A DNA stretch of 64,000 nt, from positions 186,001-250,000 of IMG/VR virus record IMGVR_UViG_3300042868_009074; one strand, written 5' to 3'. The translations under genes were made by a program, and so were the position numbers. The notes beneath the pieces are model-generated. The model saw only the letters and a program-made list of their open reading frames with translations. It was not told the origin of the DNA and did not search any database. This document shows, piece after piece, positions 1,423-34,336 of this stretch; within the stretch, counting starts at the first letter, position 1, and each line of letters opens with the position of its first letter.

Positions 1423-4400
1423 TTATCCTCTAAATAAATGGGCGTTTTTTTGTGGACTCATATTTGTATGCCCTACTTTTCTGCGATCTAAATTACCAAC
1501 AACTCCAGCTGTTGCCAGTGGGTCTGAGTTCGACTGTGGAGCCTTAGGGGCTAACAACGCCTCTTGTGCACCATATGGTCTTTGACCCTGTTCTGGCTCA
1601 GACATCATCATAGTACTTTCATATTGCTGATTTTCTCTATGTTTTTTAGAGAAATGTCTTGCAATTAATGCAGTACCAATTACTGCTGCTCCAATTGCCA
1701 CTTTACCTCTATTGTCCCCATACATTTGTTTAGCCCTAATGGCAAATGGTTGAAACTTATCACCTATTTCTTTAGCCTTACTAATTCTTAAGTTTGATAC
1801 TAATTTAGAATCGTCTGCTAATACATTAGCAGTTGCTCCAAGTCCTCTTATCGCTTCCTCGTCTGCTGCACGACCAGCTAATTGAGCAGCTCTTTCTGCA
1901 CCAGACGCGCCTTCTACTGCTTCTAATCCAATTCTTTCTAATGCTTCTACTCCAACCGCTGCCTCTTGGTTTCTCATTGGTGACAATGCTACTCCTAGCA
2001 TGTCTTCTCCACCAAAAACTTGATTAATTCTCATTGGGTTCTTCATTGCTTCTACGTCAGTGTTTTGTCCAAAGAATATTTCTGGCATAGTGTGTTGTAA
2101 CGCTTGCTTTAATCTTCCTCCTGCTTCTCCCTTTACGGTAAAGCTTATGATTCCTCTTTCTCTTAAGGTTCTGCCAAGTTGTTCTACTATTGATTCGTAA
2201 GCTCCTCTTGCACCCTGTGGTATGACTAGGTCGTCACCTCCTGTCACCATCTGACTAACCTGTTTACTATTTACATCTATACCAGAAGCTTTTATGCTTT
2301 CAGTAATTTGATTAATAGGATGAATTGACATGTCATTTTCAATTGGTATATCTGTTGTAATATGCCTAAGGGCTTGCCTAACTAGATCTTGCGATTCCGC
2401 TACTGCCTCATCTTCTATTTGTGAAAAACCATGATTGAATCTTAAGTTAACAACATTCTCATTTTGAGGACCACTAGGAAGGGAATAGTGAACAGTATGA
2501 TTTGCCTGTTCTAGATATTCTGGACTACCAATAAGAATTCTTTTTCCAGTTTTTTCACCTAAATTATCAATTTGATCTACTTCTAGTTTCCCTAAAATAT
2601 TAGATGGAATAATAAAGTTTGAACCAGATTTTTCAACACCTTCTAATGGAATTCTTGAATAAGGTTTTTTATTAAATGTTGTTTCCTCTATCATTCCAAA
2701 TTCAAGTTCTCTTCCTTGTCCAACAGCGTATGTTTGTCCAAATTCCTCTAACAGTTCAATGTGTTCTGCTATATTTCTAGCAGTTCTTGCTTCTTCTCCG
2801 GATATCTTTCCAGCATGTTGCCTAAATAGTGTTGCTCCAATGTCGGAAGTTGCCCTTGAAGTTTCTACCGCAGAAACTCTAGAAACTGGAGATATATCAG
2901 CATAGGGCAAACCTAGCTCTTGCATTCTTTGCGCATAGTGAGAAATTCTTTCCGTACCATCTTCTAGTATGTCTCCATAATGAACTGTCTTTGAAAGAGG
3001 TATTCCTGCTTCTCTATAATTCGTAGAAGTGTGAGTAAGAGATTCTATTAATTGATCTTGATCAGTATTTGGATTAAATGGTAGCCCAGGTAAGTTTCTA
3101 GCTTGTCTTGCTGCGCTCATTTGTGTTAATTCAGTATGCTCCATGTTGGTCATTCTTATATCCAGCATGTTGTTAGCCATGTTAGTTTTTATTGGAGCAA
3201 TACCAGGTGCAATTTCTATGAGATCTTCTTCTAGTCCTGTTCTTGCATTCGCTAAAGTGTCTCTTATAAGTGATCGAGCTTTTGTTTGAAAATCAGATGG
3301 AAGAGTAGTTCCTTCTGGAAGATTAGTTATATAAAACTTATCTTTACCAAATCTTAATCTTCCCTGAAAATCATCTCCAAACCTAGAGATATCATCTTCA
3401 GAGAGACCTAATGCTCTCATTTGATCTTGGGCTATGCTTCCTTCTAAATCAAGCGATACTCTTCTAATTCCCTCTTCAGTATCTGCTAAATATTTATAGC
3501 CAGTTTCACTTAATAGATTTACGTCTTTAACATTAGTAGTCAAAGTAAGCGCACTACTTCTAGTTGCTTTTCTTCTAAAATGTTGCTCAAATGCACTGAA
3601 ACCTTTTTTTCTAACAAAACCCGCTTCGTCTAATCCCCTAAATGCTTGACGACCAAGTTCTTCGTCTAACCCTGCAGATTTAACCATGTTTATAACTTGT
3701 TCTTCTGTTAAGGTTCTTTGAATTCTTAATCTATCTTCTACTATTGCTTTTTCTATATAGCCCTGCATTACTACGTCCACTTTACCTGTGTGCGTACCTT
3801 TTTCTAGAGCTTTTAAAAGACTTGGATTATTAATCGCATCTTCTTCTATGATTGATAATAGATTTGTATTTAAAATAGTATTTTCTACAGAACTAACAGT
3901 AGCACCTTGCCCTGTAAATTCAGCTTTTTCCATTAGAGATCTATCTATAAGGGAATTTGTTAAAAACTTATTTACATGTTCTTGATTTACTCCACCAACT
4001 CTTTCAAGTATATTTTTTTGATCATTTACTTGTTTCATCATTGTTACAGTAACGCTATGTAATGTATCAACAACAAAATGTGGATCGTTAGCTCTTCTCT
4101 CTGCAAACTCTCTAAGAACTTTTATTGTTTCTGGATTTTTAGCCATGGGTAATACGTTTCTTACCATAAAGTCAATGTCAAAACTGTTGTTATGAAGAGA
4201 AAATCTAGTTGGAAGACCATTTGCATTTTCGCCTTTACCCATTATCATTGTAAAAGCTTCTCTAATTGCAGTTTCTGCGTCATCTCCACCTTCTTCTAAG
4301 AAACTGTATATTGGATTTTTTAATTTTTTTGTAACAGTGCCAAATTCGTCAACATGATCTACCATTTCTCTTGCTTCGGATTGCATAAAAGCGGTTTCTG

Positions 4401-7568: not shown

Positions 7569-8990
7569 TTAAGTTTCCAGATTTAGTTGTTTTTCTGGCT
7601 TTTTAATTGTAAAAATAAAATTATCTTCTTTATCTTTATAAGATATCTCAAATATACTGCCTCTTGGAGGAATGGACTTAATAAGTATGTCTGCCAGCTT
7701 ATCTTCCATTTGTTCTCTACGAACTTGAGCTAAACCTCTGGCCCCCTTTACTGTATCCACGCCTTTTAATATTAGAGCAGATATAACTTGATCGTTATAA
7801 TTAACTGAATAACCTTTTTTAGTAAGCTTTTCTACTATAACAGACATCTCAAGTTCTGCTATTTTTTCATAATCTGATTGAATAAGGTGATTAAATACAA
7901 TAATTTTATCTAATCTATTAAGAAATTCTGGTCTAAAATGTTTTCTTACTGCATCTAAAGTATTTTTTTCAACCATTTCCTTTGGTGGAGCTTGAGTTGT
8001 AGTAGTTTTATAGTTAATATTTTTATTAAATCCAGTTCCACCAGCTAATAAATAATCTACAGTCTTTTCATTTCCCAAATTAGTAGTCATTATTATAACT
8101 GTATTTTGAAAATTAACTTCTTCGCCTTTAGCATCTGTTAAAATTCCGTCATCAAATACTCTAAGGAAAGTATTCCATAGATCTGGATGAGCTTTTTCTA
8201 CCTCGTCAAGCAAAACTACAGTTGAAGGATTCTTTTTTACTAGATTTACTAGCTGACCACCTTCATCGTGACCTATATAACCAGGTGGAGAACCAATTAA
8301 CTTTTGATTTTCATGCTTATGTTGAAATTCTCCGCAATCAATTCGCACCATAGGGTTATCTTCACCAAATAAATACTTATGAAGTGTATTAGCTAGATGA
8401 GTTTTACCAACGCCAGAAGATCCTGCAAATAAAAATATTCCTAATGGTCTGTTTTTATCGTTCAAACCTACTTGAGATCTTTTCAAAGCCGATATTACTG
8501 ACTCTACAGCATCTGTTTGTCCTATGATATTGCTATCAAGATGATTTTGAAGTCCCAAAAACTTTTGTCTAGTAACTTTTTTTACTTTATTTTTAGTTGA
8601 AGTCTTCTTATTCTTAGCGTCGTGTATTTTTTTAGCTAATTCGTCATCTATGAATATATTATCATCTAGTCCAGAGATCTCTAGTGTCTTAGAATATGCG
8701 AGATTAATCCACAAATCTATATCTAGACCGGGGTTTAGCATTACGCAACCGTTATAAAGTGCGTCAATACATTTTTCTGCCGTTGGACGGGACATCAATC
8801 TAAGAGATTCTGATATTTCAGATTTTATATTATAGATAACATTTTCTAAAATAGCTAATTTATACTCTTTAGCAGTTTTTCCAGACAACTCAGCAACTAA
8901 TGCTTCAATATCTTCTGGTGTGAGAACTTTATACTTAACGTAAGATGCTAGTTCTGGAACATATATTTGATATATCTTCATTTTAGTCAC
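7569..8990 (-). CDS. ClpA/B/C-family AAA+ ATPase, second (D2) module only, with an unrecognised N-terminal domain
   Basis: IIGQTDAV, Walker A GSSGVGKT, LIGSPPGYIGH, Walker B LLDEVEKAHPD, FRPEFLNRLD, GARGL. Confidence 0.9.
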   Translation of the reverse strand: MTKMKIYQIYVPELASYVKYKVLTPEDIEALVAELSGKTAKEYKLAILENVIYNIKSEISESLRLMSRPTAEKCIDALYNGCVMLNPGLDIDLWINLAYSKTLEISGLDDNIFIDDELAKKIHDAKNKKTSTKNKVKKVTRQKFLGLQNHLDSNIIGQTDAVESVISALKRSQVGLNDKNRPLGIFLFAGSSGVGKTHLANTLHKYLFGEDNPMVRIDCGEFQHKHENQKLIGSPPGYIGHDEGGQLVNLVKKNPSTVVLLDEVEKAHPDLWNTFLRVFDDGILTDAKGEEVNFQNTVIIMTTNLGNEKTVDYLLAGGTGFNKNINYKTTTTQAPPKEMVEKNTLDAVRKHFRPEFLNRLDKIIVFNHLIQSDYEKIAELEMSVIVEKLTKKGYSVNYNDQVISALILKGVDTVKGARGLAQVRREQMEDKLADILIKSIPPRGSIFEISYKDKEDNFIFTIKKPEKQLNLET

Positions 8991-9137
8991 CTACTTTTAA
9001 ATTAGAGATGTACTTATGAAGATTATAGTAATTACTAGATCCTGTTGCAGATACATTTAATCTGTTTTGCGAAGTAATTATATAATATAGGTTATGTATT
9101 CTTGTGATAGCTAATATTCTGTCGCTGAGAGTAAACA

Positions 9138-9167
9138 ATTATAACCACGCCTGTCAAGCTCTGTCAA
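9138..9167 (-). promoter_or_regulatory. Sigma70/SigA-type promoter upstream of the Clp ATPase gene
   Basis: TTGACA-18 nt-TATAAT on the minus strand. Confidence 0.6.
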
Positions 9168-9322
9168 GAACTTTTAGGTATTTTTTCTACTTCTGGACAA
9201 TCTCCATGAAAAGGTCCGCAAAAAGCCCAAATTTTTATAAGATCCATTGGAGTATTGATTCTATTCTTAAGAAGTAGTACTGCTCTTCTGTAATCAAAAT
9301 TGACATCGACATTCTTAGACAT
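9164..9322 (-). CDS. Small hypothetical protein (52 aa)
   Basis: MSKNVDVNFDYRRAVLLLK..., preceded by AAGGA. Confidence 0.5.
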   Translation of the reverse strand: MSKNVDVNFDYRRAVLLLKNRINTPMDLIKIWAFCGPFHGDCPEVEKIPKSS

Positions 9323-9415
9323 GTTGCCTGATCCTTTTTAGTAGTTATAATGCTTACCTATTATATCATTGACTCATATGGTGATAGTGTATATTGCATG
9401 TGATATACTTGTTCT

Positions 9416-10393
9416 ATGGAAGAATCTAAATCACTTGAATTAGCGATTGCCCAACTCGAAAGACAATTTGGAATTGGTGCAGTAATGAAGTTAGGTGCTC
9501 ATACCTCAGAGCCTTGGCCATCAGTGTCAACGGGAGCACCAACGTTAGATAAGATACTAGGGATTGGCGGATTGCCACTAGGTCGTGTTGTAGAAATTTA
9601 TGGACCAGAATCATCTGGCAAATCTACAATTGCACTATCTACAGTAGCACAAGCTCAAAAGCAAGGACTACGTTGTGCATATATAGATGCCGAACATGCG
9701 TTAGATCCAGGTTACATGACTGCACTTGGTGTAGATCTAGATGAACTATTACTTGCGCAACCAGATTACGGCGAGCAAGCATTAGAGATTGTAGATAAGC
9801 TCATTAGGACCGGAGAGGTCGGCCTTATCGTTATAGACTCAGTTGCGGCACTTGTGCCCAAGGCAGAGCTTGAAGGCGATATGGAGGCCAACCAGATGGG
9901 TCTGCAGGCACGTATGATGTCTAAGGCATTACGTAAGATCGTAGCACTTGCTAACGAGCATAAAACTCTTGTTATATTTATTAACCAGCTTCGCATGAAG
10001 ATAGGTATCATGTTTGGTAACCCAGAGACCACTCCTGGTGGTCGAGCACTACCTTACGCAGCATCTGTACGTCTAGATATTCGCAAGAAAGAAGATCTTA
10101 AGGACAAGGCCGGCGATTCAATTGGAATTAAGGTCAAAGCTAAGGTTATCAAGAATAAGATGGCACCCCCACTTAAGGTAACTGAGTTTGATATCTATTA
10201 CGGTAAGGGTGTGGACATGTATGGTTCTTTGTTGGACCTTGGATTCATGTCTGGAATCTTTACACAAAAGGGAGCTTGGGTTTACTATAATGGTGAGATG
10301 TTTTCTCAAGGAAGAGACAACGCCATCAATAAGCTCAAAGAAGACGAGAATGTTTACAAAGAAATTGCTAAGCTTTTAGATTATGAAAGCTGA
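9416..10393 (+). CDS. recA: Recombinase RecA
   Basis: GPESSGKST, IDAEHALDP, VIDSVAALVP, INQLRMKIG, GNPETTPGGRAL, KNKMAPP. Confidence 0.97.
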   Translation: MEESKSLELAIAQLERQFGIGAVMKLGAHTSEPWPSVSTGAPTLDKILGIGGLPLGRVVEIYGPESSGKSTIALSTVAQAQKQGLRCAYIDAEHALDPGYMTALGVDLDELLLAQPDYGEQALEIVDKLIRTGEVGLIVIDSVAALVPKAELEGDMEANQMGLQARMMSKALRKIVALANEHKTLVIFINQLRMKIGIMFGNPETTPGGRALPYAASVRLDIRKKEDLKDKAGDSIGIKVKAKVIKNKMAPPLKVTEFDIYYGKGVDMYGSLLDLGFMSGIFTQKGAWVYYNGEMFSQGRDNAINKLKEDENVYKEIAKLLDYES

Positions 10394-12450: not shown

Positions 12451-12508
12451 TGGATTCTATCCTTTTGTTTTTTGGGGCGGATCATCGCCTTTGTGGTTAG
12501 TGAGTGAA

Positions 12509-12537
12509 ACATTATCGGTTGATTTGTGGTTTGTCAA
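12509..12537 (-). promoter_or_regulatory. Sigma70-type promoter for the leftward genes
   Basis: TTGACA-17 nt-TAATGT on the minus strand. Confidence 0.45.
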
Positions 12538-12766
12538 CCTAGGTGGGAATATTTGTAAGAAAAATTTTTTGGACTGTAATGATTGTATGTGAACCTATAT
12601 ATACATATATAAAAGTCATATAGGGGAAAAGTTGAGAAAATTTATAAAGGGGTAATAGTATATTATATGTATATGTTTATATCTTTAACATGCCCACCGG
12701 GTCTATGTAGGATATATATATGTTTTAAAGTTTATAATGTCACTATGAGTACTAGGAGGTACCGAC

Positions 12767-12961
12767 ATGTCCCTATTCACACCACTAACACAAGCCGAGT
12801 TCGAGGCTAAGTGCGCTGCAAAGCGTGCGAAAGGCGTATCAGCACGTCAGAAGAACAACGCACAAGTAACTGCAGTAACACAGCAGGTACGCATGCAAGT
12901 AGTACAACCAGCGTTGGGCTACATCACAGCTCGCGACAAGAGCGTCCCTACAACCATCTAG
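12767..12961 (+). CDS. Cassette protein, 64 aa, copy 1
   Basis: AGGAGG RBS; paralogue of 13403-13597 with mostly synonymous or conservative changes. Confidence 0.85.
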   Translation: MSLFTPLTQAEFEAKCAAKRAKGVSARQKNNAQVTAVTQQVRMQVVQPALGYITARDKSVPTTI

Positions 12962-13061
12962 TCTTCGGACTGCTCTGGTCCCTCACTTCCCCGTAAGGGG
13001 GGTGAGGGTTAAAGGAGTATATATCTTTAAATTATAGTATGCTCGTGAAAGGAGTATTATC

Positions 13062-13208
13062 ATGTTTACACTATTAACATCATTGTTCACTATCATCGGA
13101 TTCGCACTCACCAAGGGTGTATGGATCTTCGGTGCGTACACGCTCGTACGTAAGTACGACGTAGTGAACGTAATCAAGGCTCGCGTTCAGGACTCTTCGG
13201 AGTTCTGA
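13062..13208 (+). CDS. Cassette membrane peptide (48 aa)
   Basis: GAAAGGAG RBS; MFTLLTSLFTIIGFALTKGVWIFGAY... Confidence 0.7.
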   Translation: MFTLLTSLFTIIGFALTKGVWIFGAYTLVRKYDVVNVIKARVQDSSEF

Positions 13209-13402
13209 GCGTAAGCTAAGAAAAGGTATATATATTTAAATCTTATAGTGAGCAGCAATGCACACGTGTCGTTAGAGTTTGTATTTAGGAGGAACAATGT
13301 CAGCAACCGTTCAGGTCTAGAGTTGAGGTGTGTTGTTGTTTCAACAATGTTATATATCTTTAAATATTATAGTGTCTCTATTAGTACTTAGGAGGTACAG
13401 AC

Positions 13403-13597
13403 ATGTCATTATTCACACCACTATCACAGGCCGAGTTCGAGGCTGCGTGCGCTGCAAAGCGTGCGAAAGGCGTCCAAGCACGTCAGAAGAACAACGCTGC
13501 AGTCCAGGCTGTATCACAGCAGGTACGTATGCAGGTCATTGCTCCGGCAATGGGTTACATCACGACTCGTGACAAGAGCGTTCCAACAACCATCTAG
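13403..13597 (+). CDS. Cassette protein, 64 aa, copy 2
   Basis: AGGAGG RBS; paralogue of 12767-12961. Confidence 0.85.
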   Translation: MSLFTPLSQAEFEAACAAKRAKGVQARQKNNAAVQAVSQQVRMQVIAPAMGYITTRDKSVPTTI

Positions 13598-13717
13598 TCT
13601 TCGGACTACTCTGGTCCCTCACTTCCCCGTAAGGGGGGTGAGGGTTAAAGGAGTATATATCCTTTAAATCTTATAGTGACGCAAGGAAACCCAAGTACTT
13701 GTATCAGAAAGGTAAAC

Positions 13718-13969
13718 ATGTTTACATTAGCGCAAGTTGACGCACTCATCAACACGGCTATCAGCAAGGGCGATCTGCTCCACTACAACGGTGGTCAGGC
13801 TTACATCCGTTACGGTAACAACGTGATCATCATTGATCATGCTTGTCTTCCAGTAACAATGGAAGTCCACACCGGTGGATGGGCAGAGTCCTACATTGCA
13901 GAAAACCGTGGTGGTGGATACACTCACCACACGTCGCACTTGGCCGAGCTCCATCCGGAACTCGTCTAA
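13718..13969 (+). CDS. Cassette hypothetical protein
   Basis: GAAAGG RBS before MFTLAQVDALI; GCAA-tetraloop hairpin follows. Confidence 0.75.
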   Translation: MFTLAQVDALINTAISKGDLLHYNGGQAYIRYGNNVIIIDHACLPVTMEVHTGGWAESYIAENRGGGYTHHTSHLAELHPELV

Positions 13970-14057
13970 TCGCCAGCCTGTTCCCCCGCAAGGGGGACGG
14001 GCACCAAGGATTATAGTTCTTTAAATTATAGTATGAATTCCATGAAAGGGGATAAAC

Positions 14058-14162
14058 GTGAAGACTTTACGTTCTGCGTACTATGTTACGTACATCGTGT
14101 CAGCGATTCTTTCGTTCGTTGCTTTGGCTTTTGCCTACAAGCATCGCGACGAGATTCTCTGA
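14058..14162 (+). CDS. Cassette membrane peptide (34 aa)
   Basis: GAAAGGGG RBS, GTG start, one hydrophobic helix. Confidence 0.6.
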   Translation: MKTLRSAYYVTYIVSAILSFVALAFAYKHRDEIL

Positions 14163-14455
14163 CCAACCGCTCCGGCTGCCTCTCCCCCAGGCAAGTCGGG
14201 TAAGTCGGTTACTGTTATATATCTTTAGTTTATAGCCCACTATCACGGCTAGCCTATGTCCACATAGTGGGATAGGGTAGGCATAGTGATGTATATATGT
14301 ATGTATGTATTGTACATACCTTTAAATCATAGTATGAGCGATATGCAACTGGGTACCAGAGCTATCGTGGACTTGGTCTTTACTTCCCTTTTGGGAGGTA
14401 GAGACTACTGATTTATATATCTTTAAATTATAGTTTGCTCGTGAAAGGAGTTATT

Positions 14456-14617
14456 ATGTGGACATGTGGACACTGCACTAAGGAAATTGAAGACAAGTAT
14501 GATTACTGTGGATGGTGTGAATACTGTGGATGCACGTTGGATGATCATCGTTGCGTTTGCAAATGTGGTTCTACCGATGTGGAAGATCATGATTGCACTG
14601 GAGTTGGCTCAGCGTAA
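14456..14617 (+). CDS. Cassette Cys-rich peptide
   Basis: GAAAGGAG RBS; CGHC, CGWC, CGC, CVCKC. Confidence 0.7.
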   Translation: MWTCGHCTKEIEDKYDYCGWCEYCGCTLDDHRCVCKCGSTDVEDHDCTGVGSA

Positions 14618-14679
14618 GCTGGGTTAACTTCCCTGATTTATATACCTTTAAATTTCATAGAGAACTTAGGAGGTTCATT

Positions 14680-14850
14680 ATGGCTAAGAAAGCTATTATC
14701 TGTCGGCACTCTATCTGGTCGTTGATTAGCGACGATTCACGTCGTGCACTCATCACCCTCATCGAGGCTAACGTTGAGTTTGCTAATCGTCAGCTCAAGT
14801 TTGAGTTGGTTAATGGTCAGCTCAAGAAGGCCCCAGCGAAAGCTGGGTAA
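14680..14850 (+). CDS. Cassette hypothetical protein (56 aa)
   Basis: AGGAGG RBS; ends KKAPAKAG inside a hairpin. Confidence 0.75.
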   Translation: MAKKAIICRHSIWSLISDDSRRALITLIEANVEFANRQLKFELVNGQLKKAPAKAG

Positions 14851-14907
14851 CCTTCAACTATTTATATATCTTTAAATTATAGTATGTCCCTACAGAATGG
14901 AGATTAC

Positions 14908-15162
14908 ATGTATTACGTGTATCTACGACGTCGTATTGCGGTAGCAGTTGTACTGTTTATCGCCTTTATCCCAGTCATCAAGGTGCTCGTTCAAGAGCCA
15001 CCTGCCGATTGCGACCATGCATTGCATGTTGTTGCAAGAGGCGAGACTATTTGGTCAATCGCACATGCGCATTGCACCTCCGGTATCATCACCGCCATTG
15101 ATCAATTGGTAGATCAGTATGGTGGTGTTATCGATGTCGGTGACCGCATTCAGTTGCCTTGA
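14908..15162 (+). CDS. Membrane-anchored LysM-domain protein
   Basis: YLRRRIAVAVV TM segment, then HVVARGETIWSIA...IDVGDRIQLP. Confidence 0.8.
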   Translation: MYYVYLRRRIAVAVVLFIAFIPVIKVLVQEPPADCDHALHVVARGETIWSIAHAHCTSGIITAIDQLVDQYGGVIDVGDRIQLP

Positions 15163-15488
15163 CCAGGTCAAGTACACTCAGCCTTTTAGGTTGGGTGTAT
15201 TTGGCTATTGTATATATCTTTAAATCTTATAGTGGGAGAGATGGCACAGACAAGACTCATCCCGCTGCAGACGTGCAGTCCGGTTCGTCATGAACTGGGA
15301 TCTTGTTGGTAGTCACTGATCTTACCCGCTTAAGAGCGGTGCAGTGACTATTTACCTAATTGTTATATATCTTTAAATTATAGAGTGAGAAGCAATTGCA
15401 AACCGATGGGGCACTGGACTGCAGTGCATTGTTTCTTATTGTGTATATATCTTTAAATTTTATAGTGTGACTTGTGAAAGGAGTTATT

Positions 15489-15668
15489 ATGTCTAATGTA
15501 GACGAAGACGGACGTGGAGCATGTGTGAAATGTGGTCGTAATCAAGTATTGATTGATGAACTATGTGAAATGTGTGACAATGGGTTCACCCTAAAGGAAA
15601 TCAACATGTTTGAAACATGGTTGGCCGTTGGGGCACCCGGCGAGACCCCCTGGAGTAATCCAGGGTAA
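15489..15668 (+). CDS. Cassette zinc-finger peptide
   Basis: CVKC...CEMC; GAAAGGAG RBS. Confidence 0.7.
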   Translation: MSNVDEDGRGACVKCGRNQVLIDELCEMCDNGFTLKEINMFETWLAVGAPGETPWSNPG

Positions 15669-15764
15669 GTCCGTTGTATTTATACACCTTTAGTCCATAG
15701 TCCACTATCACGCGCAGGGTGATTATATATCTTTAAATACTTTAGTGAACTAAGGAGGTTCATT

Positions 15765-15920
15765 ATGTATTATGATTTTGACAAAGATGCTTGGTATTGT
15801 TCGACTTGTCACATCGATCTCAAGCAGATGGTTATTGACTATGACCCAGATTGTGGTGAATGCGAGTCTGCCATTTACACACTTCTGGTCAGTGGTGATC
15901 ACGACGTTTCGGCGTCGTGA
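15765..15920 (+). CDS. Cassette zinc-finger peptide (51 aa)
   Basis: AAGGAGG RBS; WYCSTC...DCGEC. Confidence 0.7.
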   Translation: MYYDFDKDAWYCSTCHIDLKQMVIDYDPDCGECESAIYTLLVSGDHDVSAS

Positions 15921-16111
15921 TTATCCACTTGTATATATCTTTTAAATTTTATAGTGAGTTGCCAACAAAACCAACCAGCGAAGTGGTTCTTCGGGTCTAG
16001 CACAGCACTAGGCGATAATGCAACTAAGATCTTCGGGAGTCATTCTCCCGAGGATCTATGCTGAAAGGTATATATCTTTAAATTATAGTTCGACTTTTGA
16101 AAGGAGTTATT

Positions 16112-16306
16112 ATGAGATTATTTATTATGCCAGATGGAAAAGGCGAAGGCGTCGATGCTGTGGTCTGTGAACGTTGTATTGAAAATGACTACGACATCAA
16201 CGAGAACAACGGTATGAGTGACCTTGAGCAGCAGCGCTACTTAAACGGGCTCGATGTTGCACCTGCTGCATCGTATTGTTGGTTGTGTGGAGTTGACTCG
16301 GCTTAG
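16112..16306 (+). CDS. Cassette zinc-finger peptide
   Basis: CERC...CWLC; GAAAGGAG RBS. Confidence 0.7.
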   Translation: MRLFIMPDGKGEGVDAVVCERCIENDYDINENNGMSDLEQQRYLNGLDVAPAASYCWLCGVDSA

Positions 16307-16372
16307 GCTGGGTTAACTCTCATGTCTTATATACCTTTAAATACTTATATGAACTCTTGAAAGGAGAACACA

Positions 16373-16606
16373 ATGAAGAATGCGATTTTATTCTTTCGTA
16401 ACATTGGCAATCCACACGGCATGGAATGGCGCAAGATTGGCTGTTTCAACATTTGGGCTTTTAGCGACTGGGCTGATTACGCAGGCTCTGGCTTGCATTG
16501 GAGCACCCATGACCGTTGCCTCGTGTTGAAAACATCCGCGAACAAGCGTAAATCTTGGAAGACCATTACACTTCTGCGTTTGCCCAAGGAAGGGACCTCA
16601 GCTTAG
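16373..16606 (+). CDS. Cassette hypothetical protein
   Basis: GAAAGGAG RBS; 77 aa. Confidence 0.7.
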   Translation: MKNAILFFRNIGNPHGMEWRKIGCFNIWAFSDWADYAGSGLHWSTHDRCLVLKTSANKRKSWKTITLLRLPKEGTSA

Positions 16607-16811
16607 GCTGAGGGACTTTTCCTTGTTTATATATCTTTAAATTTCATAGTGGTAGGCTGTACCGACGGCTATTCGATGGTCGGAGTAAATGGTGGGTCAA
16701 CACAGCGCAGGCTCCATCAGCTGGGTACCAGAAAGCTCAGAACGTTTATCGTTCTGGGTTTTTCTATTATTATATATCTTTAAATTTCATAGCGAACTAA
16801 GGAGGTTCAAC

Positions 16812-16970
16812 ATGTTTGTTACTAACTGTCCTCGTTGCGGGCAACTTGCGCCTGACTTTGAGAGTCCATCACATCAAGACGAATGGTGTTTTCATCATCG
16901 TTTGAATGGATTTGGCGAAGTCGTTGTTTCTGACGACGATTACCAGTCATCGGACGACGAGCCCTTTTAG
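16812..16970 (+). CDS. Cassette peptide with CPRC motif
   Basis: AAGGAGG RBS before MFVTNCPRCG. Confidence 0.7.
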   Translation: MFVTNCPRCGQLAPDFESPSHQDEWCFHHRLNGFGEVVVSDDDYQSSDDEPF

Positions 16971-17029
16971 GGTTCGTTGTTTGAGCTTTATATATCTTTA
17001 AATTTCATAGTGACCTAAGGAGGTTCATT

Positions 17030-17371
17030 ATGGCAACAACGCCATCCGTCACATCCCTACTATTACAACAGGAAGATTTGCAAACGCAAATTGATTCTGT
17101 TGACAGCAAGATTGCTGCGCTTCATCAGACCATGAAGGAGTGCGAGTCTCAAATCAACGCTTATGAGCAGGACCGTAAGCGTCTTGATTATTTGACTTGG
17201 GAGATTCAGAAGGCTTTGGCCAAGGCTGTCTGCCCTACTAACCAAGTTCTTCTTCGGTTCTCTAGTACTCTCAACGCTCTTCGGAATCCTGACCATCCGA
17301 GCTATGGAGCACTAGCGATTGACCAACGCTTTGCAGCCCTTGGCTTTACTCAGTCTTCTTCGGAAGGCTGA
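17030..17371 (+). CDS. Cassette coiled-coil protein
   Basis: AAGGAGG RBS; heptad pattern. Confidence 0.8.
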   Translation: MATTPSVTSLLLQQEDLQTQIDSVDSKIAALHQTMKECESQINAYEQDRKRLDYLTWEIQKALAKAVCPTNQVLLRFSSTLNALRNPDHPSYGALAIDQRFAALGFTQSSSEG

Positions 17372-17425
17372 GTTTAGCTGGATTATATATCTTTAAATTA
17401 TAGTGGGACGAAAGGAGTCATCATC

Positions 17426-17614
17426 ATGAATGACTGGGTAACACCAAAAATGGTGGACCAAGCTTTAGACTTTGCAGAACTACATCAACGTTCAAACAAG
17501 TTTTGTCGTGCAATGTTTCTGACCTTCAGGGCTAAGGGTAACTTGTCTGACAAGCAGGTTCTCAAGCTGTTGGAAATCAAAGCTGGTTACCGCCGCAGTG
17601 CTCGAGCTTCTTAG
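17426..17614 (+). CDS. Cassette hypothetical protein
   Basis: GAAAGGAG RBS; GNLSDKQV motif. Confidence 0.75.
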   Translation: MNDWVTPKMVDQALDFAELHQRSNKFCRAMFLTFRAKGNLSDKQVLKLLEIKAGYRRSARAS

Positions 17615-17867
17615 CTCGGGTTACTGTGGTCTTTATATATATCTTTAGCTTATAGTTGTCGTCCACTATCACGCGCCAGCTTGTATGCACATAGTGCTAT
17701 ACAGATGGTGTAGTGATTATACTGTGTGTATATCTTTAAATCTTATAGTGCCGACTGGAGTTGTAACAAGGACTGTCCGGGCACACAAGGATTGCATCTC
17801 TGACGAGAGATGTAGTCTTGTATCTATATAGATCTTTAAATGTCATAGTGTCCTTAGGAGGTACACT

Positions 17868-18020
17868 ATGTCCGCTATTTGCGCACGTTGTCGCTTGGAA
17901 AGCAACAACATCACACCACAGTCCATCGACCACATCCGTGGTCATTACGCAGCATTCCATGCTGCTTCGTCGAAGCCTCGCAAGGCTCGTGCGAAGAAGG
18001 CCCCAGCGAAAGCTGGGTGA
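17868..18020 (+). CDS. Cassette basic peptide (50 aa)
   Basis: AGGAGG RBS; MSAICARC...KKAPAKAG. Confidence 0.7.
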   Translation: MSAICARCRLESNNITPQSIDHIRGHYAAFHAASSKPRKARAKKAPAKAG

Positions 18021-18332
18021 CCTTCAACCGTTTATATGTCTTTAGTTTATATCTATAGTCTCACGTTTCAGGGATTGGAAACCAGTGAACTAAGTGAATA
18101 GTATGAGGAGTCCGCGAACGATTGTCCTACTGAACGCTGTAATAGTATCTTATATATGTTTATATATATGTTGGAGCAATGTCTTAGACTTGATCAGGCA
18201 TAGTTATTTTGCCGGCAAACAATTACGTCTATATTATTAATAGACATATATCTTAAGTTTTAATATTATATTATTCTAAATTTTCAAATAGGGACCCAAT
18301 CCGTGGGTTTCTTGTAGTAGTTTGGAGAAACT

Positions 18333-18758
18333 ATGAAAGTCCGTATCAACGCTCTTGCTTCTGGCAAGGGCTCAACTCAGCAAGCACCAATCCAAAAGCG
18401 TTCCGCTGATGGTCAACGCTTCGCTTTCTTGGTTAGCATTATGGATGCTACCAACACTGTACCAGTCGACCTTCGTTTCGACTCGGTTGCCTCTGATGGC
18501 GTCAAGTACCAGAACTTCTCTGGTGCGTATGAACTCTGGTTTTCAGCAGAAGAGAACTCTGAGATTGTTTCTCGGTTCAACACAGCAAAGGCTTCTGGCC
18601 AAGTTGTGTACTATGAGTTCACTTGCTTGACCGCTGACAAGTCTGTCCCCTATCTCTCTGAGAAGGGTGTCACTTATCAGACCATCATCCTGAATGCTGA
18701 CCGCTTTGCGGAACGCATTTGCGGTTTGGCACCAGTGCCCGCCATCAAGTTCGTTTGA
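18333..18758 (+). CDS. Hypothetical beta-rich protein
   Basis: GGAG RBS; 141 aa; hairpins downstream. Confidence 0.75.
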   Translation: MKVRINALASGKGSTQQAPIQKRSADGQRFAFLVSIMDATNTVPVDLRFDSVASDGVKYQNFSGAYELWFSAEENSEIVSRFNTAKASGQVVYYEFTCLTADKSVPYLSEKGVTYQTIILNADRFAERICGLAPVPAIKFV

Positions 18759-19452
18759 TGAGATTTGCCACCAAGTTCTCTTGGTGAAGACACCAGTCTG
18801 GTCACTTCGGTGACTAGGCTGTGTGTAACCCCCTCTATATATCCTTAGGTTTGATTTCACCTAGCACTGATCCGCTGAAACAATCCTTGTGTCCTACCTT
18901 GTGTAGTTGTGTACTGACGAGTACATTACTACATTAGGTAACACTCGTACCTACATAGATTCTAAATCTATAATCGATCTCAAGTTCTCTGGGGTTGGGC
19001 CCCCAGTTAGATGATTGCAGGTATCATATCGATATCTTTAGCCCGTTGTCCCGCTTTAAGGCATTTCCATTTGGATTTGCCGGCCAGGCAACAAAAGCAA
19101 ACATATGATAGTTTGGTAGATACCTACGGCTGATTGCCAAGAAACTACCCTTTTCGTTAGTATAAGTATACTTATCCCCTAATGTATCTATAGCAATATA
19201 TATATTATTGTTGGACAAATGCTTATATTAATATCTCTCAGGGGTATACCCATTATAAAACTATGCATATGTAACCTGCCAAGGTGTTATGCATTTGGGT
19301 ATACTAGACACGGCAAATGTAAGTATACCCAATATGGGAGATTATCTCCCCCTATATTAGGTGTCTCTATACTCTCTTATTCCTTTCTAGAGTATATGAT
19401 ATACCCCTGAGAATATTCGTGTTCGTTGGTTTTGCCGGCGAACCACAAGATT

Positions 19453-24227: not shown

Positions 24228-26771
24228 TTGGCCATTAACCCCAAAACAAGAACTATCTGCTATGCTGATGGACCTATTCGCTCTACAGGTGGATATCAAG
24301 TAGGTTTCTACGATATATCTCACCTTCGCCAGGCATTACAATATTCTGGCGAATCATTCTATCGGGTAGGCTCTTTGCCTATCCCACAAAACGAACATGA
24401 ATTTACCCAAATTCAACAAATCATTAATGATCCTTCTATTCAGTATGCTCTAGTTGACAAGAACAAAATTGTTATCTGTCAAATTGGCAACAATACTGAA
24501 TGGCTTAGTATCTTTACTGATATGGGTTATACTGTCCACGGTGGAGGCAAGACTGCTAAGCGGTTGAAGACTCTCCATCGACCTACTTTAATCAATGCTC
24601 ACTTTGATCTTGATGAAATCAAAATACGCTATTGTGAAGCCGGCGACTTTAGTCGCTATTTCGATAGCGATGAAGAAGGCTATTGGCTTATAGATGCTGA
24701 AGACTATCAAGAATTTTATCAAAATCCTGAAGTTTGGGATCGACTCTTAGACGGTGGCTTTGCTATCCATCCACGATTGATCCATAAAGGTATTGATAAC
24801 CTACCTATCTTTGATCCCGCTGAAAACGAGGATCCAGGTGAGTACTATCTTAATCCTACTATGCGTATGGATTGCATCCGTAATCTATATAATGCTAAAG
24901 TATTTAATATTAGACTTACTGGACCAATGGGTCAGCTTAAAGGCAACTGCTTTGTTACCGATAAACTTCCTGAAGGTGTAGATGTATTGACTTGGCATGG
25001 AAATGTCAAGACAGAGATCTCATATTCTGAAGGCTATCAACTCATTGCTGAGCCTCAAGGACCTAAGTCCAAAGTCCGTACGGACGATCAAACTCTTATT
25101 AATATGCCACAACTCTTTACCAAGAGTGATATGGAATATTGGCTAGACGAGGAATATAAGAAACTCTTCAACGATGCCATCAACAATAAGCTTTTGATGA
25201 ACTGGAAGAATGTATACCAACGTTCTTTCCGTGATGATACTAACCTTGAAGATGAAGAGTCTTATGCACGGTTTCAATATCAAGGTTATCGCTGGAAAGC
25301 AATGGGGATGAAGGTAACTGATTCCCCTTGGTTATTCCAGACCCTTGCTACTAGCCATGCTAAACCCCTTCAAGAACGTATCCCAATCCCTTGTTCTGTA
25401 TCTGAACAGATTATTAGCGAGTCTATGGCTCGCTTATCTGGTTATGATGTAGAAGTCGAAGAAGGAACTATTCAACGCATCAATGACCTTGGTGTACACG
25501 TAGTTAATGATCTCGATTGGATTGAGATGTATGAGAGCCATGGTGGCTGCGACGGTGACGACTTCTTTGGTTTATTCTATAGGACTCCAGTTGGTGGACA
25601 ATATGATAAAGAAAAGGTTGTCTTTGCACGTCGATCTCCAAATGGTCTTGGTGAGTACTCTGTATTTAGATATGTAGAAGGACAATGGTCTCCAACTTGG
25701 TTGACCAGTGACGGTACTCAAGTTAAGTTTCCTGAGTGTTCTGGACGTGGTTGGCCTATGCGCCTATCTACCGCCATTCACGCAGGGAAAGTTAGCTATG
25801 TAGGACTTCCTTCTTCTACTGCTCCTAAAGCTGAACGTACTGAAACCTATACTAGACAAGATGTCTTTAATGATATCCGATCTAGTATGACAGGTGGAGG
25901 CGTTGGCGGTTTCGTCAATGCTGTAATGCTACATACTTCTGTGTTCCATTCTCATCGTCCACTTCAACTGTGTAGTTTGGAAGATGCAATCGACGGTTGC
26001 ACTCAGACAAACGAACCAGCTGACCGTGAAGCGATTGAGCTTGAAGCTAAAGTATTGGTTGATGAAGTTATTAGTTCTGGACTTCCAGTAGACCGTTCAT
26101 TATGGGATGCTAAGAAGTTTGACTACTATCTCAAGCCAGGCCAATTTGTAGAAAAGCACGAAGGTAAAATCACTCAGCTTAATATGATCACGAAAACTAA
26201 ATATCGTGAGTATGTAAAGATGATTACCGAATGGGCTCAAAAGAACTGTCAACCTGATGAAGTTATTCATAAGATTGGCTATCGCTTGAGCTTCAATGCT
26301 ATTCCTATCTTAAAACAATTCCGTAAAGATATTTACAACTTGAATCAATCAGACATGAATGAATCTAGTGGTTATCTTGACAGCAGTAGCTGGGACTTCC
26401 TGTATCAATCAATCGTTGATAAGATTGAACTACATGACAATGAGTCTGATCGACACGATCTAGTACTTGGTCTCTATTCTGCCAGCTTGAAGCACCCAAC
26501 TTCAAATGGTAAAGTAAGTGACCAAATCGTATTCAATCGACATGTCTTTCCGTTCCTTGAACGAGCACTCCAATATTATGGATTGGCTAACGTAGTTTCT
26601 TTCATTAGAAACAAAGATGGCACAGTCCGAGTAATGCAGAGCAAGACATCTGAATGGATTGGCATCGATGAAGATGGCAGTTATCATACCTTTGATGAAG
26701 CCATTGAATACCAAAGATTCCGTGGTAAGATTAGCCCTATTGTGTTTACCAACGCAAAGAAAACTGCTTAA
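24228..26771 (+). CDS. Single-subunit two-barrel (DPBB) RNA polymerase, QDE-1/YonO-like
   Basis: AAGGAGG RBS. Motifs LDGGFAI (DG.G.I), FNIR...LKG (fQiR...KG), HGGCDGDD (metal-binding loop), RRSPNGLGE (R.P....G[DE]), VGGFVNAVM (lG..aNa), DAIDG (AVD). Confidence 0.7.
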   Translation: MAINPKTRTICYADGPIRSTGGYQVGFYDISHLRQALQYSGESFYRVGSLPIPQNEHEFTQIQQIINDPSIQYALVDKNKIVICQIGNNTEWLSIFTDMGYTVHGGGKTAKRLKTLHRPTLINAHFDLDEIKIRYCEAGDFSRYFDSDEEGYWLIDAEDYQEFYQNPEVWDRLLDGGFAIHPRLIHKGIDNLPIFDPAENEDPGEYYLNPTMRMDCIRNLYNAKVFNIRLTGPMGQLKGNCFVTDKLPEGVDVLTWHGNVKTEISYSEGYQLIAEPQGPKSKVRTDDQTLINMPQLFTKSDMEYWLDEEYKKLFNDAINNKLLMNWKNVYQRSFRDDTNLEDEESYARFQYQGYRWKAMGMKVTDSPWLFQTLATSHAKPLQERIPIPCSVSEQIISESMARLSGYDVEVEEGTIQRINDLGVHVVNDLDWIEMYESHGGCDGDDFFGLFYRTPVGGQYDKEKVVFARRSPNGLGEYSVFRYVEGQWSPTWLTSDGTQVKFPECSGRGWPMRLSTAIHAGKVSYVGLPSSTAPKAERTETYTRQDVFNDIRSSMTGGGVGGFVNAVMLHTSVFHSHRPLQLCSLEDAIDGCTQTNEPADREAIELEAKVLVDEVISSGLPVDRSLWDAKKFDYYLKPGQFVEKHEGKITQLNMITKTKYREYVKMITEWAQKNCQPDEVIHKIGYRLSFNAIPILKQFRKDIYNLNQSDMNESSGYLDSSSWDFLYQSIVDKIELHDNESDRHDLVLGLYSASLKHPTSNGKVSDQIVFNRHVFPFLERALQYYGLANVVSFIRNKDGTVRVMQSKTSEWIGIDEDGSYHTFDEAIEYQRFRGKISPIVFTNAKKTA

Positions 26772-34310: not shown

Positions 34311-34336
34311 TCAATACCACCTACGGAAACTATTCT

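What the first reader, a model, noticed from the sequence alone, without database searches (positions are those of the whole stretch)
14216..17717. Second cassette class: variant motif followed by a conserved CCACTATCACG hairpin element
Seen: three copies (14237, 15702, 17663) of CCACTATCACG follow a variant motif (CTTTAG instead of CTTTAAAT) and close with GTGAT. The two long copies have a central CAC-ATA-GTG triloop hairpin with compensatory flanks (CCAC/GTGG versus GCAC/GTGC), and the middle copy is internally shortened. They punctuate the array every 1.5-2 kb. Inference: a conserved structured RNA, or a DNA hairpin signal (promoter, nick or entry site).
Basis: partly seen in the sequence, partly recalled or inferred. 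Interest (0 to 1): 0.6.

Follow-up and report, generated by a model that had tools for sequence, protein, structure and literature searches.

The report
ORF-less hairpin cassettes in phage array
Among the many small early genes of an uncultured 268-kb freshwater phage sit three (plus one degenerate) gene-less units, each made of a variant phage promoter, an invariant 10-11-base box and a hairpin of variable length; the same units recur in its close relatives, and they most likely make a small structured RNA or leader signal whose role has not been tested.

Summary
CCACTATCACG occurs exactly three times in the array (14237, 15702, 17663). Each copy follows a CTTTAG variant of the array's promoter-like motif. 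Two copies are 55-56-nt imperfect hairpins and one is a 23-nt short form. A fourth, degenerate copy lies at 18031-18078.

The window comes from a 268-kb jumbo phage of lake metagenomes. Positions 13.0-18.1 kb hold about 22 canonical promoter-like motifs (TATATATCTTTAAAT..ATAG). These drive tiny ORFs and ORF-less cassettes, and the motif is essentially absent from the rest of the genome.

The hairpins are strand-asymmetric. The + strand folds at -18.6 to -22.7 kcal/mol and the - strand at -13 to -16. Differences between copies and strains mostly keep pairing through G.U. This favours a single-stranded + strand form, most simply RNA, over a cruciform.

Close relatives carry the module. Invariant parts are CTTTAG and CCACTATCAC. 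The distal stem is dispensable: there are 56-, 46- and 23-nt forms, and the CAC-ATA-GTG triloop is lost in some. More distant family members have other promoters and no such element.

There is no Rfam match, no RNA data, and covariation is weak. Best reading: a conserved gene-less early cassette giving a box-plus-hairpin RNA, probably acting in cis. Its function is inferred, not shown.

The parts
13018..18060 (+). Early-type cassette array. It holds about 22 canonical promoter-like motifs (TATATATCTTTAAAT + 1-3 nt + ATAG). Each is followed by an SD plus small ORF, or by an ORF-less stretch, and ends in a terminator-like hairpin.
   Evidence: The motif's 11-mers are the most over-represented in the 268-kb genome and are confined to this region. 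There are 12 terminator-like hairpins on the + strand against 4.3 expected.
14216..14235 (+). Variant (CTTTAG) promoter-like motif of module 1.
   Evidence: It scores 10.4 on the canonical PWM, against 19.5-26.3 for canonical sites.
14237..14291 (+). Element copy 1, long form: the box CCACTATCACG, then a 55-nt imperfect hairpin with a CAC-AUA-GUG apex that closes with GTGAT.
   Evidence: Strain variants at 14256, 14258 and 14281 keep the fold. An orthologue is present in L268/L269.
14292..14311 (.). AT-rich (TGTA)n-like spacer between copy 1 and the next canonical promoter. Its length varies between strains (an 8-nt deletion).
15679..15700 (+). Variant (CTTTAG) promoter-like motif of module 2.
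15702..15724 (+). Element copy 2, short form: the box, a 7-nt loop, then GTGATT, with a weak 5-bp stem at -4.6 kcal/mol.
   Evidence: It is identical (23/23) in L271 and L279, within flanks that are only 31-78% identical.
17634..17655 (+). Variant (CTTTAG) promoter-like motif of module 3. A 7-nt spacer (17656-17662) follows.
17663..17717 (+). Element copy 3, long form: the box plus a 21-bp imperfect hairpin with basal helix AUCAC/GUGAU.
   Evidence: Strain variants at 17698/17699 keep pairing. Orthologues exist as a 56-nt form (L273-L276, L280) and a 46-nt form (L268-L270, L277, L278).
18031..18078 (+). Fourth module, degenerate: CTTTAG at 18040, ATAG at 18055, then TCTCACG..CAGGGATT. It sits at the end of the array, ahead of a conserved leader of about 250 nt and the 141-aa ORF (18333).
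   Evidence: It is identical in L268, L269, L273 and L277.
14312..14336 (+). Canonical promoter-like motif directly after copy 1. It drives an ORF-less cassette (14337-14410).
   Evidence: It is 100% conserved in L268.
15725..15750 (+). Canonical promoter-like motif abutting copy 2. It drives the Zn-ribbon ORF 15765-15920.
17726..17750 (+). Canonical promoter-like motif after copy 3. It drives an ORF-less cassette (17751-17830).

Best explanation
The three elements (and a fourth degenerate one) are a distinct, conserved class of gene-less cassette in the phage's early promoter array.

Anatomy. Each module has three parts:
- an AT-rich promoter-like motif that carries CTTTAG where the canonical motif has CTTTAAAT;
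- 1-14 nt later, the invariant box CCACTATCAC(G);
- a + strand hairpin of variable length, whose base pairs the AUCAC of the box with GUGAU.

Proposed mechanism (inferred).
- The phage-specific polymerase that reads the array starts at or near the variant promoter and transcribes rightward.
- The nascent RNA therefore begins with the box and folds into the hairpin.
- The box plus the basal helix is the recognised part. The distal stem is a dispensable extension.
- The short forms cannot terminate, and every module is followed at once by a canonical promoter and cassette. For those two reasons I favour a cis-acting leader signal of the 'linear box plus hairpin' type. It would work like lambda nut, HK022 put or a processing/stabilising hairpin, and would affect the polymerase or the fate of transcripts that run on through the terminator-rich array.
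- The long forms may also end as free hairpin RNAs of about 60-70 nt.

Shown: the anatomy, the strand asymmetry, the structure-preserving variation, and the conservation of box and CTTTAG in relatives.
Inferred: transcription, RNA-level action and the cis mechanism.
For: Real repeat.
- Three exact copies, confined to the array.

Context.
- The array is dense and unidirectional: promoter-like motif, then SD-ORF or ORF-less unit, then hairpin. The motif is essentially absent from the rest of the 268 kb.
- The element has no conserved ORF.
- The phage encodes its own single-chain two-barrel RNA polymerase, with a fold match to QDE-1/RDR2 and to phage RNAPs.

Strand asymmetry.
- With RNA parameters, + strand folds are -18.6 to -22.7 kcal/mol and - strand folds -13.1 to -16.4.
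- With DNA parameters, z is -2.9 to -3.7 on the + strand and -0.8 to -1.3 on the - strand.

One common structure.
- A single structure fits copies 1 and 3. It has 21 pairs and 95% of cells are paired. One pair shows a double compensatory change and 5 pairs show one-sided changes that keep pairing by wobble.
- Thirteen random substitutions would keep an equally stable fold in only 0.9-2.4% of trials.

Uneven conservation between copies 1 and 3.
- 0 of 27 positions differ in the box, apex and closing blocks, against 14 of 28 in the middle (p = 1.4e-5; the blocks were defined post hoc).

Strain variants in lake metagenomes.
- 14256 A>G changes A-U to G.U.
- 17699 A>G changes U-A to U.G.
- The others fall in bulges or unpaired positions.

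Close relatives.
- They carry the module in 56-, 46- and 23-nt forms.
- CTTTAG and CCACTATCAC are invariant in every copy.
- The short form is 23/23 identical inside flanks that are 31-78% identical.
- All fully covered relatives keep a hairpin form at the copy-3 position.

Placement.
- The distance from the hairpin end to the next promoter core is 8-30 nt. Ordinary cassette-end hairpins sit 12-22 nt from the next core, so the modules occupy the same kind of position.
Against: - No RNA data: all 24 runs that hold the region are DNA.
- The variant promoter departs from the canonical motif at two invariant positions and scores far lower on its PWM, so it may not fire.
- In one relative's copy the ATAG part is missing altogether.
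- Two short forms in relatives lack GTGAT and have no stable fold. A hairpin is therefore not universal to the module.
- Covariation is thin. With 6 distinct sequences there is 1 double change. Shuffles reach the observed pairing in 33/500 trials and the covariation score in 84/500.
- Template-switch 'quasipalindrome correction' can create apparent compensation without selection.
- Part of the conservation in relatives lies in blocks that are about 98% identical overall, so it may reflect recent exchange rather than constraint.
- The element is absent from 78 more distant family members and from public viral and metagenome contig scans.
- No known RNA family matches.
- The elements do not meet a simple intrinsic-terminator consensus.
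Confidence: 0.45

Rival explanations
1. Trans-acting small RNA or decoy. The long modules are complete mini transcription units. Their product of about 60-70 nt has the invariant box as a 5' seed or protein-binding site and the hairpin as a stabilising 3' end. It would act on host or phage mRNAs or sequester a protein.
For: - A conserved 5' box with a variable hairpin is the usual evolutionary pattern of seed-type sRNAs (established knowledge).
- The hairpins sit where cassette-end hairpins sit relative to the next promoter.
- ORF-less, structured cassettes are common in these arrays, here and in relatives.
- Copy 1 has an 11-nt perfect antisense match to the start-codon region of ORF 14456, with a duplex energy in the top 0.4% of background.
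Against: - Half of the box is paired in the basal helix.
- The short forms have no terminator-like hairpin, so they cannot give a discrete sRNA.
- The antisense match is not significant after 48 tests. It is broken by the natural variant 14258 G>A while the target is unchanged.
- No match to the reverse complement of the box stands out elsewhere in the genome.
- The host is unknown.
Confidence: 0.2
2. DNA-level site. Either the box and its inverted partner (ATCAC..GTGAT) form an operator for a phage regulator placed between two promoters, or the + strand hairpin forms in single-stranded DNA as a replication, priming, nicking or entry signal.
For: - The short form is a 17-bp operator-like palindrome, ATCAC-N7-GTGAT, abutting the next promoter.
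- It resembles lambdoid TATCAC..GTGATA operators. That comparison comes from memory and is a lead, not a test.
- The box and CTTTAG are invariant at DNA level whatever the distance between them.
- The + strand also folds well with DNA parameters.
- Contigs of several runs break at the elements.
Against: - In the long forms the half-sites are 41-42 bp apart. The - strand cannot form the matching hairpin, so a cruciform is unlikely.
- Wobble-type changes preserve pairing only on one strand.
- Two short forms lack GTGAT.
- No HTH or other DNA-binding domain was found among the array's ORFs.
- GC skew gives no origin signal here.
Confidence: 0.13
3. No function of its own. The module is the relic of a cassette that lost its ORF (promoter + start of leader + end hairpin), or a selfish quasi-palindrome. 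It would be spread and homogenised by the frequent recombination between promoter repeats.
For: - The arrays are highly mosaic. Cassettes are shuffled, gained and lost between relatives and strains.
- The hairpin interior has been lost repeatedly, giving 56, 46 and 23-nt forms.
- The elements are polymorphic in the population.
- They are absent from more distant relatives.
Against: - The box and CTTTAG are invariant in every copy of every lineage, while the middle of the hairpin differs at 14 of 28 positions.
- The short form is an island of 100% identity in diverged flanks.
- Every fully covered relative keeps two or three modules, a hairpin form at the same syntenic place, and an identical fourth module.
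Confidence: 0.15
4. N4-type hairpin promoter. The apical CAC-ATA-GTG stem-loop would extrude from supercoiled DNA and be recognised by an injected giant virion RNA polymerase.
For: - There are three copies in the early region, each with a 4-5-bp stem and a 3-nt loop.
- The genome encodes a 3799-aa protein.
Against: - N4 promoters need a GC-rich heptamer and a loop with 5'G and 3'A, -11 purine/-10G and -8G (PMC4496689). Here the loop is ATA/TAT.
- The apex is absent in the 46-nt and short forms of relatives.
- No T7-like polymerase domain was found (PF00940).
- The giant proteins match no PDB sequence and match only an 'endolysin' PHROG.
Confidence: 0.02

Closest known systems
Lambda nut sites (boxA + boxB) and HK022 put RNAs
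   Same: A conserved linear box followed by a hairpin, a few copies per genome. Each copy lies just downstream of an early promoter and ahead of terminators. The box is more conserved than the hairpin.
   Different: There is no sequence or Rfam similarity. The polymerase here is probably a phage enzyme, not host RNAP with Nus factors. Antitermination is not shown. Each module is followed by another promoter, and some copies have no hairpin.
Early promoter arrays of RNAP-encoding jumbo phages (phiKZ, AR9)
   Same: A phage-specific, highly conserved AT-rich motif of about 10 nt lies just upstream of the presumed start of many small early units and differs from phage to phage (PMC7598289). Here each clade of the family also has its own motif at the same locus.
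   Different: No multisubunit beta/beta'-like genes were detected. The polymerase found instead is a single-chain QDE-1-like two-barrel enzyme. My search and the review I read (PMC7598289) turned up no second promoter subclass tied to a fixed leader box in those phages; I did not look further.
RNase III processing hairpins of the T7 early region
   Same: Imperfect stem-loops of about 20 bp punctuate a rightward early transcription unit every 1-2 kb (established knowledge of T7 R0.3-R1.3).
   Different: No sequence relation. The short forms cannot be RNase III substrates. Each module has its own promoter-like motif. Cleavage is untested.
N4 virion-RNAP hairpin promoters
   Same: Three copies in the early region, each with a small stem and a 3-nt loop.
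   Different: The loop and stem sequence determinants are not met. The apex is dispensable in relatives. No N4-like vRNAP was detected.

Membership tests
N4-type hairpin promoter | 5-7-bp stem with a 3-nt loop, conserved in all promoters | tested here: not met
   The long copies have a 4-5-bp apical stem and a 3-nt loop. The apex is replaced by a tetraloop in the 46-nt form and is absent in the short forms.
N4-type hairpin promoter | GC-rich heptamer centred at -11; loop with 5'G and 3'A; -11 purine, -10G, -8G (PMC4496689) | tested here: not met
   The loop is AUA on the + strand and UAU on the - strand, and the stem is CAC/GUG.
N4-type hairpin promoter | Giant virion RNAP with a T7-like polymerase domain | tested here: not met
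   PF00940 was not found in the complete genome. The control genomes also gave no hit for it, so this negative is weak. The 3799-aa ORF hits only phrog_20474 and no PDB sequence.
Intrinsic (rho-independent) terminator | GC-rich stem followed directly by a U tract | tested here: not met
   The consensus scan lists 12 array hairpins but none of the three elements. Only 4 of the 8 bases after the stem are T (read directly from the sequence).
Any Rfam family | Covariance-model match | tested here: not met
   cmscan of 12500-18800 at E<=1 gave only a chance-level LPR10 hit, and that hit lies elsewhere.
nut/put-like leader signal (works-like comparison only) | Located downstream of an early promoter, with a conserved linear box followed by a hairpin | tested here: inconclusive
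   The architecture is met in the long and 46-nt forms. It is not met in two short forms. Promoter activity is unproven.
nut/put-like leader signal (works-like comparison only) | Makes the polymerase read through downstream terminators | not testable with these tools
   Needs in vivo or in vitro transcription.
Structured RNA (general) | Compensatory base changes that support one fold | tested here: inconclusive
   95% of cells are paired, with 1 double and 6 one-sided changes among 6 distinct sequences. Shuffles reach the observed values in 33/500 and 84/500 trials. The random-mutation test gives p of about 0.01-0.02.
Jumbo-phage vRNAP-type early promoter array | Phage-specific AT-rich motif repeated upstream of many early units | tested here: met
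   Clade-specific motifs occur in relatives. The definition is from PMC7598289.
Jumbo-phage vRNAP-type early promoter array | Multisubunit beta/beta'-like RNAP genes | tested here: not met
   PF00623 and PF00562 are absent, and both hit all 14 control genomes. A single-chain two-barrel RNAP is present instead.

The most novel reading that the evidence does not exclude
The module could be a dedicated ligand or template for the phage's own QDE-1-like two-barrel RNA polymerase. Two versions are possible. In one, the CTTTAG promoter subclass with its fixed leader box is read by the second polymerase paralogue (the genome has two, 53% identical). In the other, the box-hairpin RNA binds the polymerase, either as a 6S-like decoy or as a template for RNA-primed or RNA-templated synthesis, and so times the shut-off or switch of early transcription.
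Probability: 0.05. Interest if true: 0.8.

Novelty: new variant of a known kind. Interest (0 to 1): 0.42.

Why it matters
If the modules are transcribed, they would be a simple, sequence-defined regulatory RNA signal in a large family of freshwater jumbo phages. I found no cultured relative in the phage collection. These phages carry single-chain QDE-1-like RNA polymerases and clade-specific promoter arrays.

The pairing of a promoter subclass with an invariant leader box gives a concrete handle for three questions:
- how such polymerases recognise promoters;
- how they escape or read through terminators;
- how early expression is partitioned.

The 56-, 46- and 23-nt forms are a natural deletion series and already indicate which part should matter: the box and the basal helix, not the triloop.

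If instead the modules turn out to be relics, they still document how fast early-gene cassettes are shuffled between phage lineages.

Tried and rejected
Searches that gave nothing useful.
- Megablast of the region and tblastn of the 847-aa and 1214-aa ORFs against cultured phages: no match.
- Viral-contig scan for box...GTGAT: only unspecific hits.
- Metagenome-contig scan for CTTTAG..ATAG..box: 14 chance hits, none in a promoter array.
- The search for related loci with the 212-aa and 141-aa neighbours: only the same phage.
- Covariance model R1 on 78 family members and on five whole related records: nothing. As a positive control, R1 finds all three copies in the phage's own genome.
- Rfam: nothing.

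Readings tested and not supported.
- Polymerase and DNA-binding domains: Pfam RNAP families were not found. DxDGD-type motif scans were uninformative. No HTH domain was found among the array ORFs.
- Giant ORFs: no Pfam or PDB sequence match.
- Origin of replication: cumulative GC skew shows no turning point at the array.
- Coding potential: the only ORF over an element (17685-17831) has no SD, crosses a promoter and is not shared by copy 1, so it was rejected.
- sRNA target idea: copy 1 is antisense to the start of ORF 14456, but this is not significant after multiple testing and is broken by a natural variant.
- Homology of the elements to other cassettes: only short motif-level matches.
- RNA evidence: all 24 runs that hold the region are DNA.

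Full report
**Source and setting.**
- The window is bases 13618-77617 (reverse strand) of a 104-kb IMG/VR virus record that is 49% complete.
- A 267,766-bp record rated 100% complete (G001) holds the same sequence. It is colinear with the window with 0 mismatches, and window position = G001 position - 186000.
- Twenty-four sequencing runs hold the region. All are lake-water metagenomes and none is RNA.
- No cultured phage is similar at DNA or protein level.

**The array.**
- Window 13.0-18.1 kb is a dense, unidirectional array.
- It holds about 22 copies of TATATATCTTTAAAT followed after 1-3 nt by ATAG(TG). Each copy is followed either by an SD and a 48-113-aa ORF (several are Zn-ribbon-like) or by an ORF-less stretch. 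Each unit ends in a terminator-like hairpin.
- The motif's 11-mers are the most over-represented words of the whole 268-kb genome and are confined to this 5-kb cluster.
- Positions CTTTAAAT are invariant in 21 copies.
- This matches what is described for early promoters of RNAP-encoding jumbo phages: a phage-specific AT-rich motif of about 10 nt near -10 (PMC7598289).

**Check of the observation.** It is confirmed.
- CCACTATCACG is exact at 14237, 15702 and 17663. With one mismatch allowed, 0.52 matches are expected by chance.
- These are the only promoter-linked copies in the complete genome. One more exact 11-mer lies inside a HAD-hydrolase ORF on the other strand and is taken as chance.
- Each copy follows a CTTTAG variant of the motif. 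The variant differs from the canonical motif at two invariant positions and scores -0.4 to 10.4 on its PWM, against 19.5-26.3 for canonical sites.
- The two long copies fold into imperfect hairpins of 21 pairs, at -22.7 and -22.2 kcal/mol, with z = -2.7 and -3.4.
- The middle copy is a 23-nt short form with a 5-bp stem.
- A fourth CTTTAG motif at 18040 is followed by a degenerate box (TCTCACG...CAGGGATT). The variant promoter and the box therefore always travel together.

**Strand and structure.**
- The fold is strongly asymmetric. With RNA parameters the + strand gives -18.6 to -22.7 kcal/mol and the - strand -13.1 to -16.4.
- With DNA parameters only the + strand beats shuffled controls (z = -2.9 to -3.7 against -0.8 to -1.3).
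- One common structure fits copies 1 and 3. It has 21 pairs and 95% of cells are paired.
Five pairs change on one side only and keep pairing by wobble.
- Starting from either copy, 13 random substitutions keep an equally stable fold in only 0.9-2.4% of trials.
- Conservation is very uneven. No differences occur in 27 positions of the box, apex and closing blocks, against 14 in 28 positions of the middle (p = 1.4e-5; the blocks were chosen after looking).
- These results point to a single-stranded + strand form, most simply RNA. They argue against a symmetric cruciform.

**Population variants.** Contigs of four other lake runs were laid on the region.
- One run carries a strain with 14256 A>G (A-U becomes G.U), 14258 G>A (a bulge), 14281 G>A (unpaired) and an 8-nt deletion in the AT-rich spacer.
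- In copy 3 that strain has 17698 T>C (a bulge) and 17699 A>G (U-A becomes U.G).
- The variant folds stay at -20.3 and -21.8 kcal/mol. On their own these are not significant (0.31 and 0.13).
- Contigs often break at the elements, and some joints skip whole groups of cassettes. This suggests polymorphism and cassette turnover, but the evidence for it is weak.

**Distant relatives.**
- The ClpB-like ATPase next to the array retrieved 78 related contigs at 54-97% identity, many from genomes of about 200 kb.
- Each clade has an array at the same place but with its own AT-rich motif. ORF-less structured cassettes are common in them.
- Covariance model R1, built from copies 1 and 3, finds nothing in these contigs or in five whole related records. 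It does find all three copies in the phage's own genome.

**Close relatives.**
- Homologues of the 113-aa array ORF led to assemblies L268-L280. These share the canonical promoter and do carry the module.
- Forms found:
  - the long copy-1 form, identical to the strain variant above;
  - the long copy-3 form with one A>G change that keeps a U.G pair;
  - a 46-nt copy-3 form in which the CAC-AUA-GUG apex is replaced by a tetraloop and one U.G becomes C-G (-18.6 kcal/mol);
  - the 23-nt short form, identical in two further assemblies although its flanks are only 31-78% identical;
  - two short forms that lack GTGAT and do not fold.
- Invariant in every copy are the AT-rich stretch with CTTTAG and, 1-14 nt later, CCACTATCAC.
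- In one form the ATAG part of the promoter is missing.
- Every fully covered relative keeps a hairpin form at the copy-3 position. Every one also keeps an identical fourth module ahead of a conserved leader.
- On six distinct sequences, 95% of cells pair, with one double and six one-sided changes. Shuffles reach the observed values in 33/500 and 84/500 trials, so covariation is suggestive only.
- Part of the conservation lies in blocks that are about 98% identical overall and may be recent exchange.

**Interpretation.**
- The module is a conserved, gene-less cassette class: variant promoter, invariant leader box, and a hairpin whose distal part is dispensable.
- I take it to be transcribed rightward, so that the RNA starts with the box and folds on itself. 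The box and basal helix would be the recognised part.
- The short forms cannot terminate, and every module abuts a canonical promoter. I therefore favour a cis-acting leader signal of the box-plus-hairpin kind, working like nut or put or a processing/stabilising hairpin.
- I rank a free trans-acting sRNA second, then a relic or selfish palindrome, then a DNA-level operator or single-strand signal.
- An N4-type hairpin promoter fails its defining tests. The loop sequence is wrong (PMC4496689), the apex is lost in relatives, and no T7-like polymerase was found.
- None of the functional steps is shown, because there is no RNA evidence.

**Polymerase context (noticed in passing).**
- The 847-aa ORF at 24228-26771 is a core gene of the family, with 237 homologues at 50-92% identity and no Pfam hit.
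- It was modelled at pLDDT 85.
- Its best structural matches are QDE-1 and RDR2 (E = 2e-9), followed by the phage RNA polymerases P32 gp64, P74 gp62, phi14:2 gp66 and P23-45 gp96.
- It is therefore a single-chain two-barrel RNA polymerase, with an invariant HGGxDxDDF motif.
- A 53%-identical paralogue lies at G001 1537-4071.
- Which enzyme reads the array is unknown. Pfam models of multisubunit and T7-like RNAPs find nothing.

**Verdict.**
- The repeat is real and non-random and is conserved in close relatives. It is most likely an RNA-level box-plus-hairpin signal.
- It is a new variant of a known kind, of moderate interest.
The invariant parts are the CTTTAG promoter variant and the 10-nt box.

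Noticed in passing
window 24228-26771 (+); paralogue at G001 1537-4071 (L156): The 847-aa ORF just right of the array is a core gene of the phage family with no Pfam hit. Its AlphaFold model (pLDDT 85) matches QDE-1/RDR2 and the phage two-barrel RNA polymerases P32 gp64, P74 gp62, phi14:2 gp66 and P23-45 gp96. The genome holds a second copy that is 53% identical.
   Followed up: partly
window 16635-16770 (+); L176 (reverse complement) 18322-18527: This ORF-less cassette (promoter, about 120 nt, terminator-like hairpin) is the only cassette of the array conserved in the 83%-ATPase relative L176 (81% identity over 210 nt). It is 93% identical in L271. It is a candidate conserved early non-coding RNA.
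   Followed up: partly
window 13232, 14320, 15218, 15371, 15939, 17734 (+): Six further canonical promoters are followed by 60-130 nt with no SD or plausible ORF before the next hairpin and promoter. The array appears to encode many small non-coding RNAs as well as tiny proteins.
   Followed up: no
loci L175-L252: At least 78 freshwater viral contigs, many from genomes of about 200 kb, share the ClpB-like ATPase. Each has an early-type array at the same locus, and each clade has a different AT-rich promoter motif, for example ..TATAAATATATC.GTG..TTTATGGGTAG and ..TTTTTTGAGGATAG.
   Followed up: partly
L176 (rc) 18499-18608; L179 (rc) 18925-19038: A two-hairpin ORF-less cassette of about 100 nt is shared by two relatives that use different promoter motifs.
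   Followed up: no
window 14256-14266 versus 14455-14465: Copy 1's 5' arm and loop is perfectly antisense over 11 nt to the start-codon region of the Zn-ribbon ORF 14456. The duplex energy is -31.6 kcal/mol, in the top 0.4% of background. This is not significant after multiple testing and is broken by a natural variant.
   Followed up: yes
window 18060-18332 (+): The leader between the fourth CTTTAG module and the 141-aa ORF is conserved in relatives. Its first ~95 nt (18060-18153) differ at one position in L268, L269 and L273; the region 18030-18332 as a whole is 83% identical to L268. The array cassettes to its left are shuffled between the same relatives.
   Followed up: no
window 12930-16765: Contigs of one lake run join 14002 to 15438, 13160 to 16765 and 12930 to 13595, and contigs of several runs end at the elements. 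This suggests gain and loss of cassettes by recombination between promoter repeats. The support is weak (short sides, low depth).
   Followed up: no
G001 114939-139983 (-) (L170, L171): Three adjacent giant ORFs of 3799, 2071 and 2313 aa have no Pfam or PDB sequence match. The 3799-aa ORF hits only phrog_20474, annotated 'endolysin'.
   Followed up: partly
G001 1.5-8.5 kb versus 210-222 kb: A set of three large ORFs of matching sizes occurs twice in G001: 845/569/538 aa at 1.5-8.5 kb and 850/567/539 aa at 210-222 kb. In the second set they are the RNA polymerase, a helicase and a subtilase. Only the polymerase pair was compared (53% identical). The record is about 60 kb longer than related genomes of 200-210 kb. 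This could be a real duplication or an assembly chimera.
   Followed up: no
window 7569-10393, 34304-35917, 36732-59619: Other recognisable genes are a ClpB-like AAA ATPase, RecA, an S8 subtilase, a DEAD/ResIII helicase, a JAB-domain protein and an AAA protein. There are four tRNA genes: Leu-TAA, Lys-TTT, Met-CAT and Arg-TCT.
   Followed up: no
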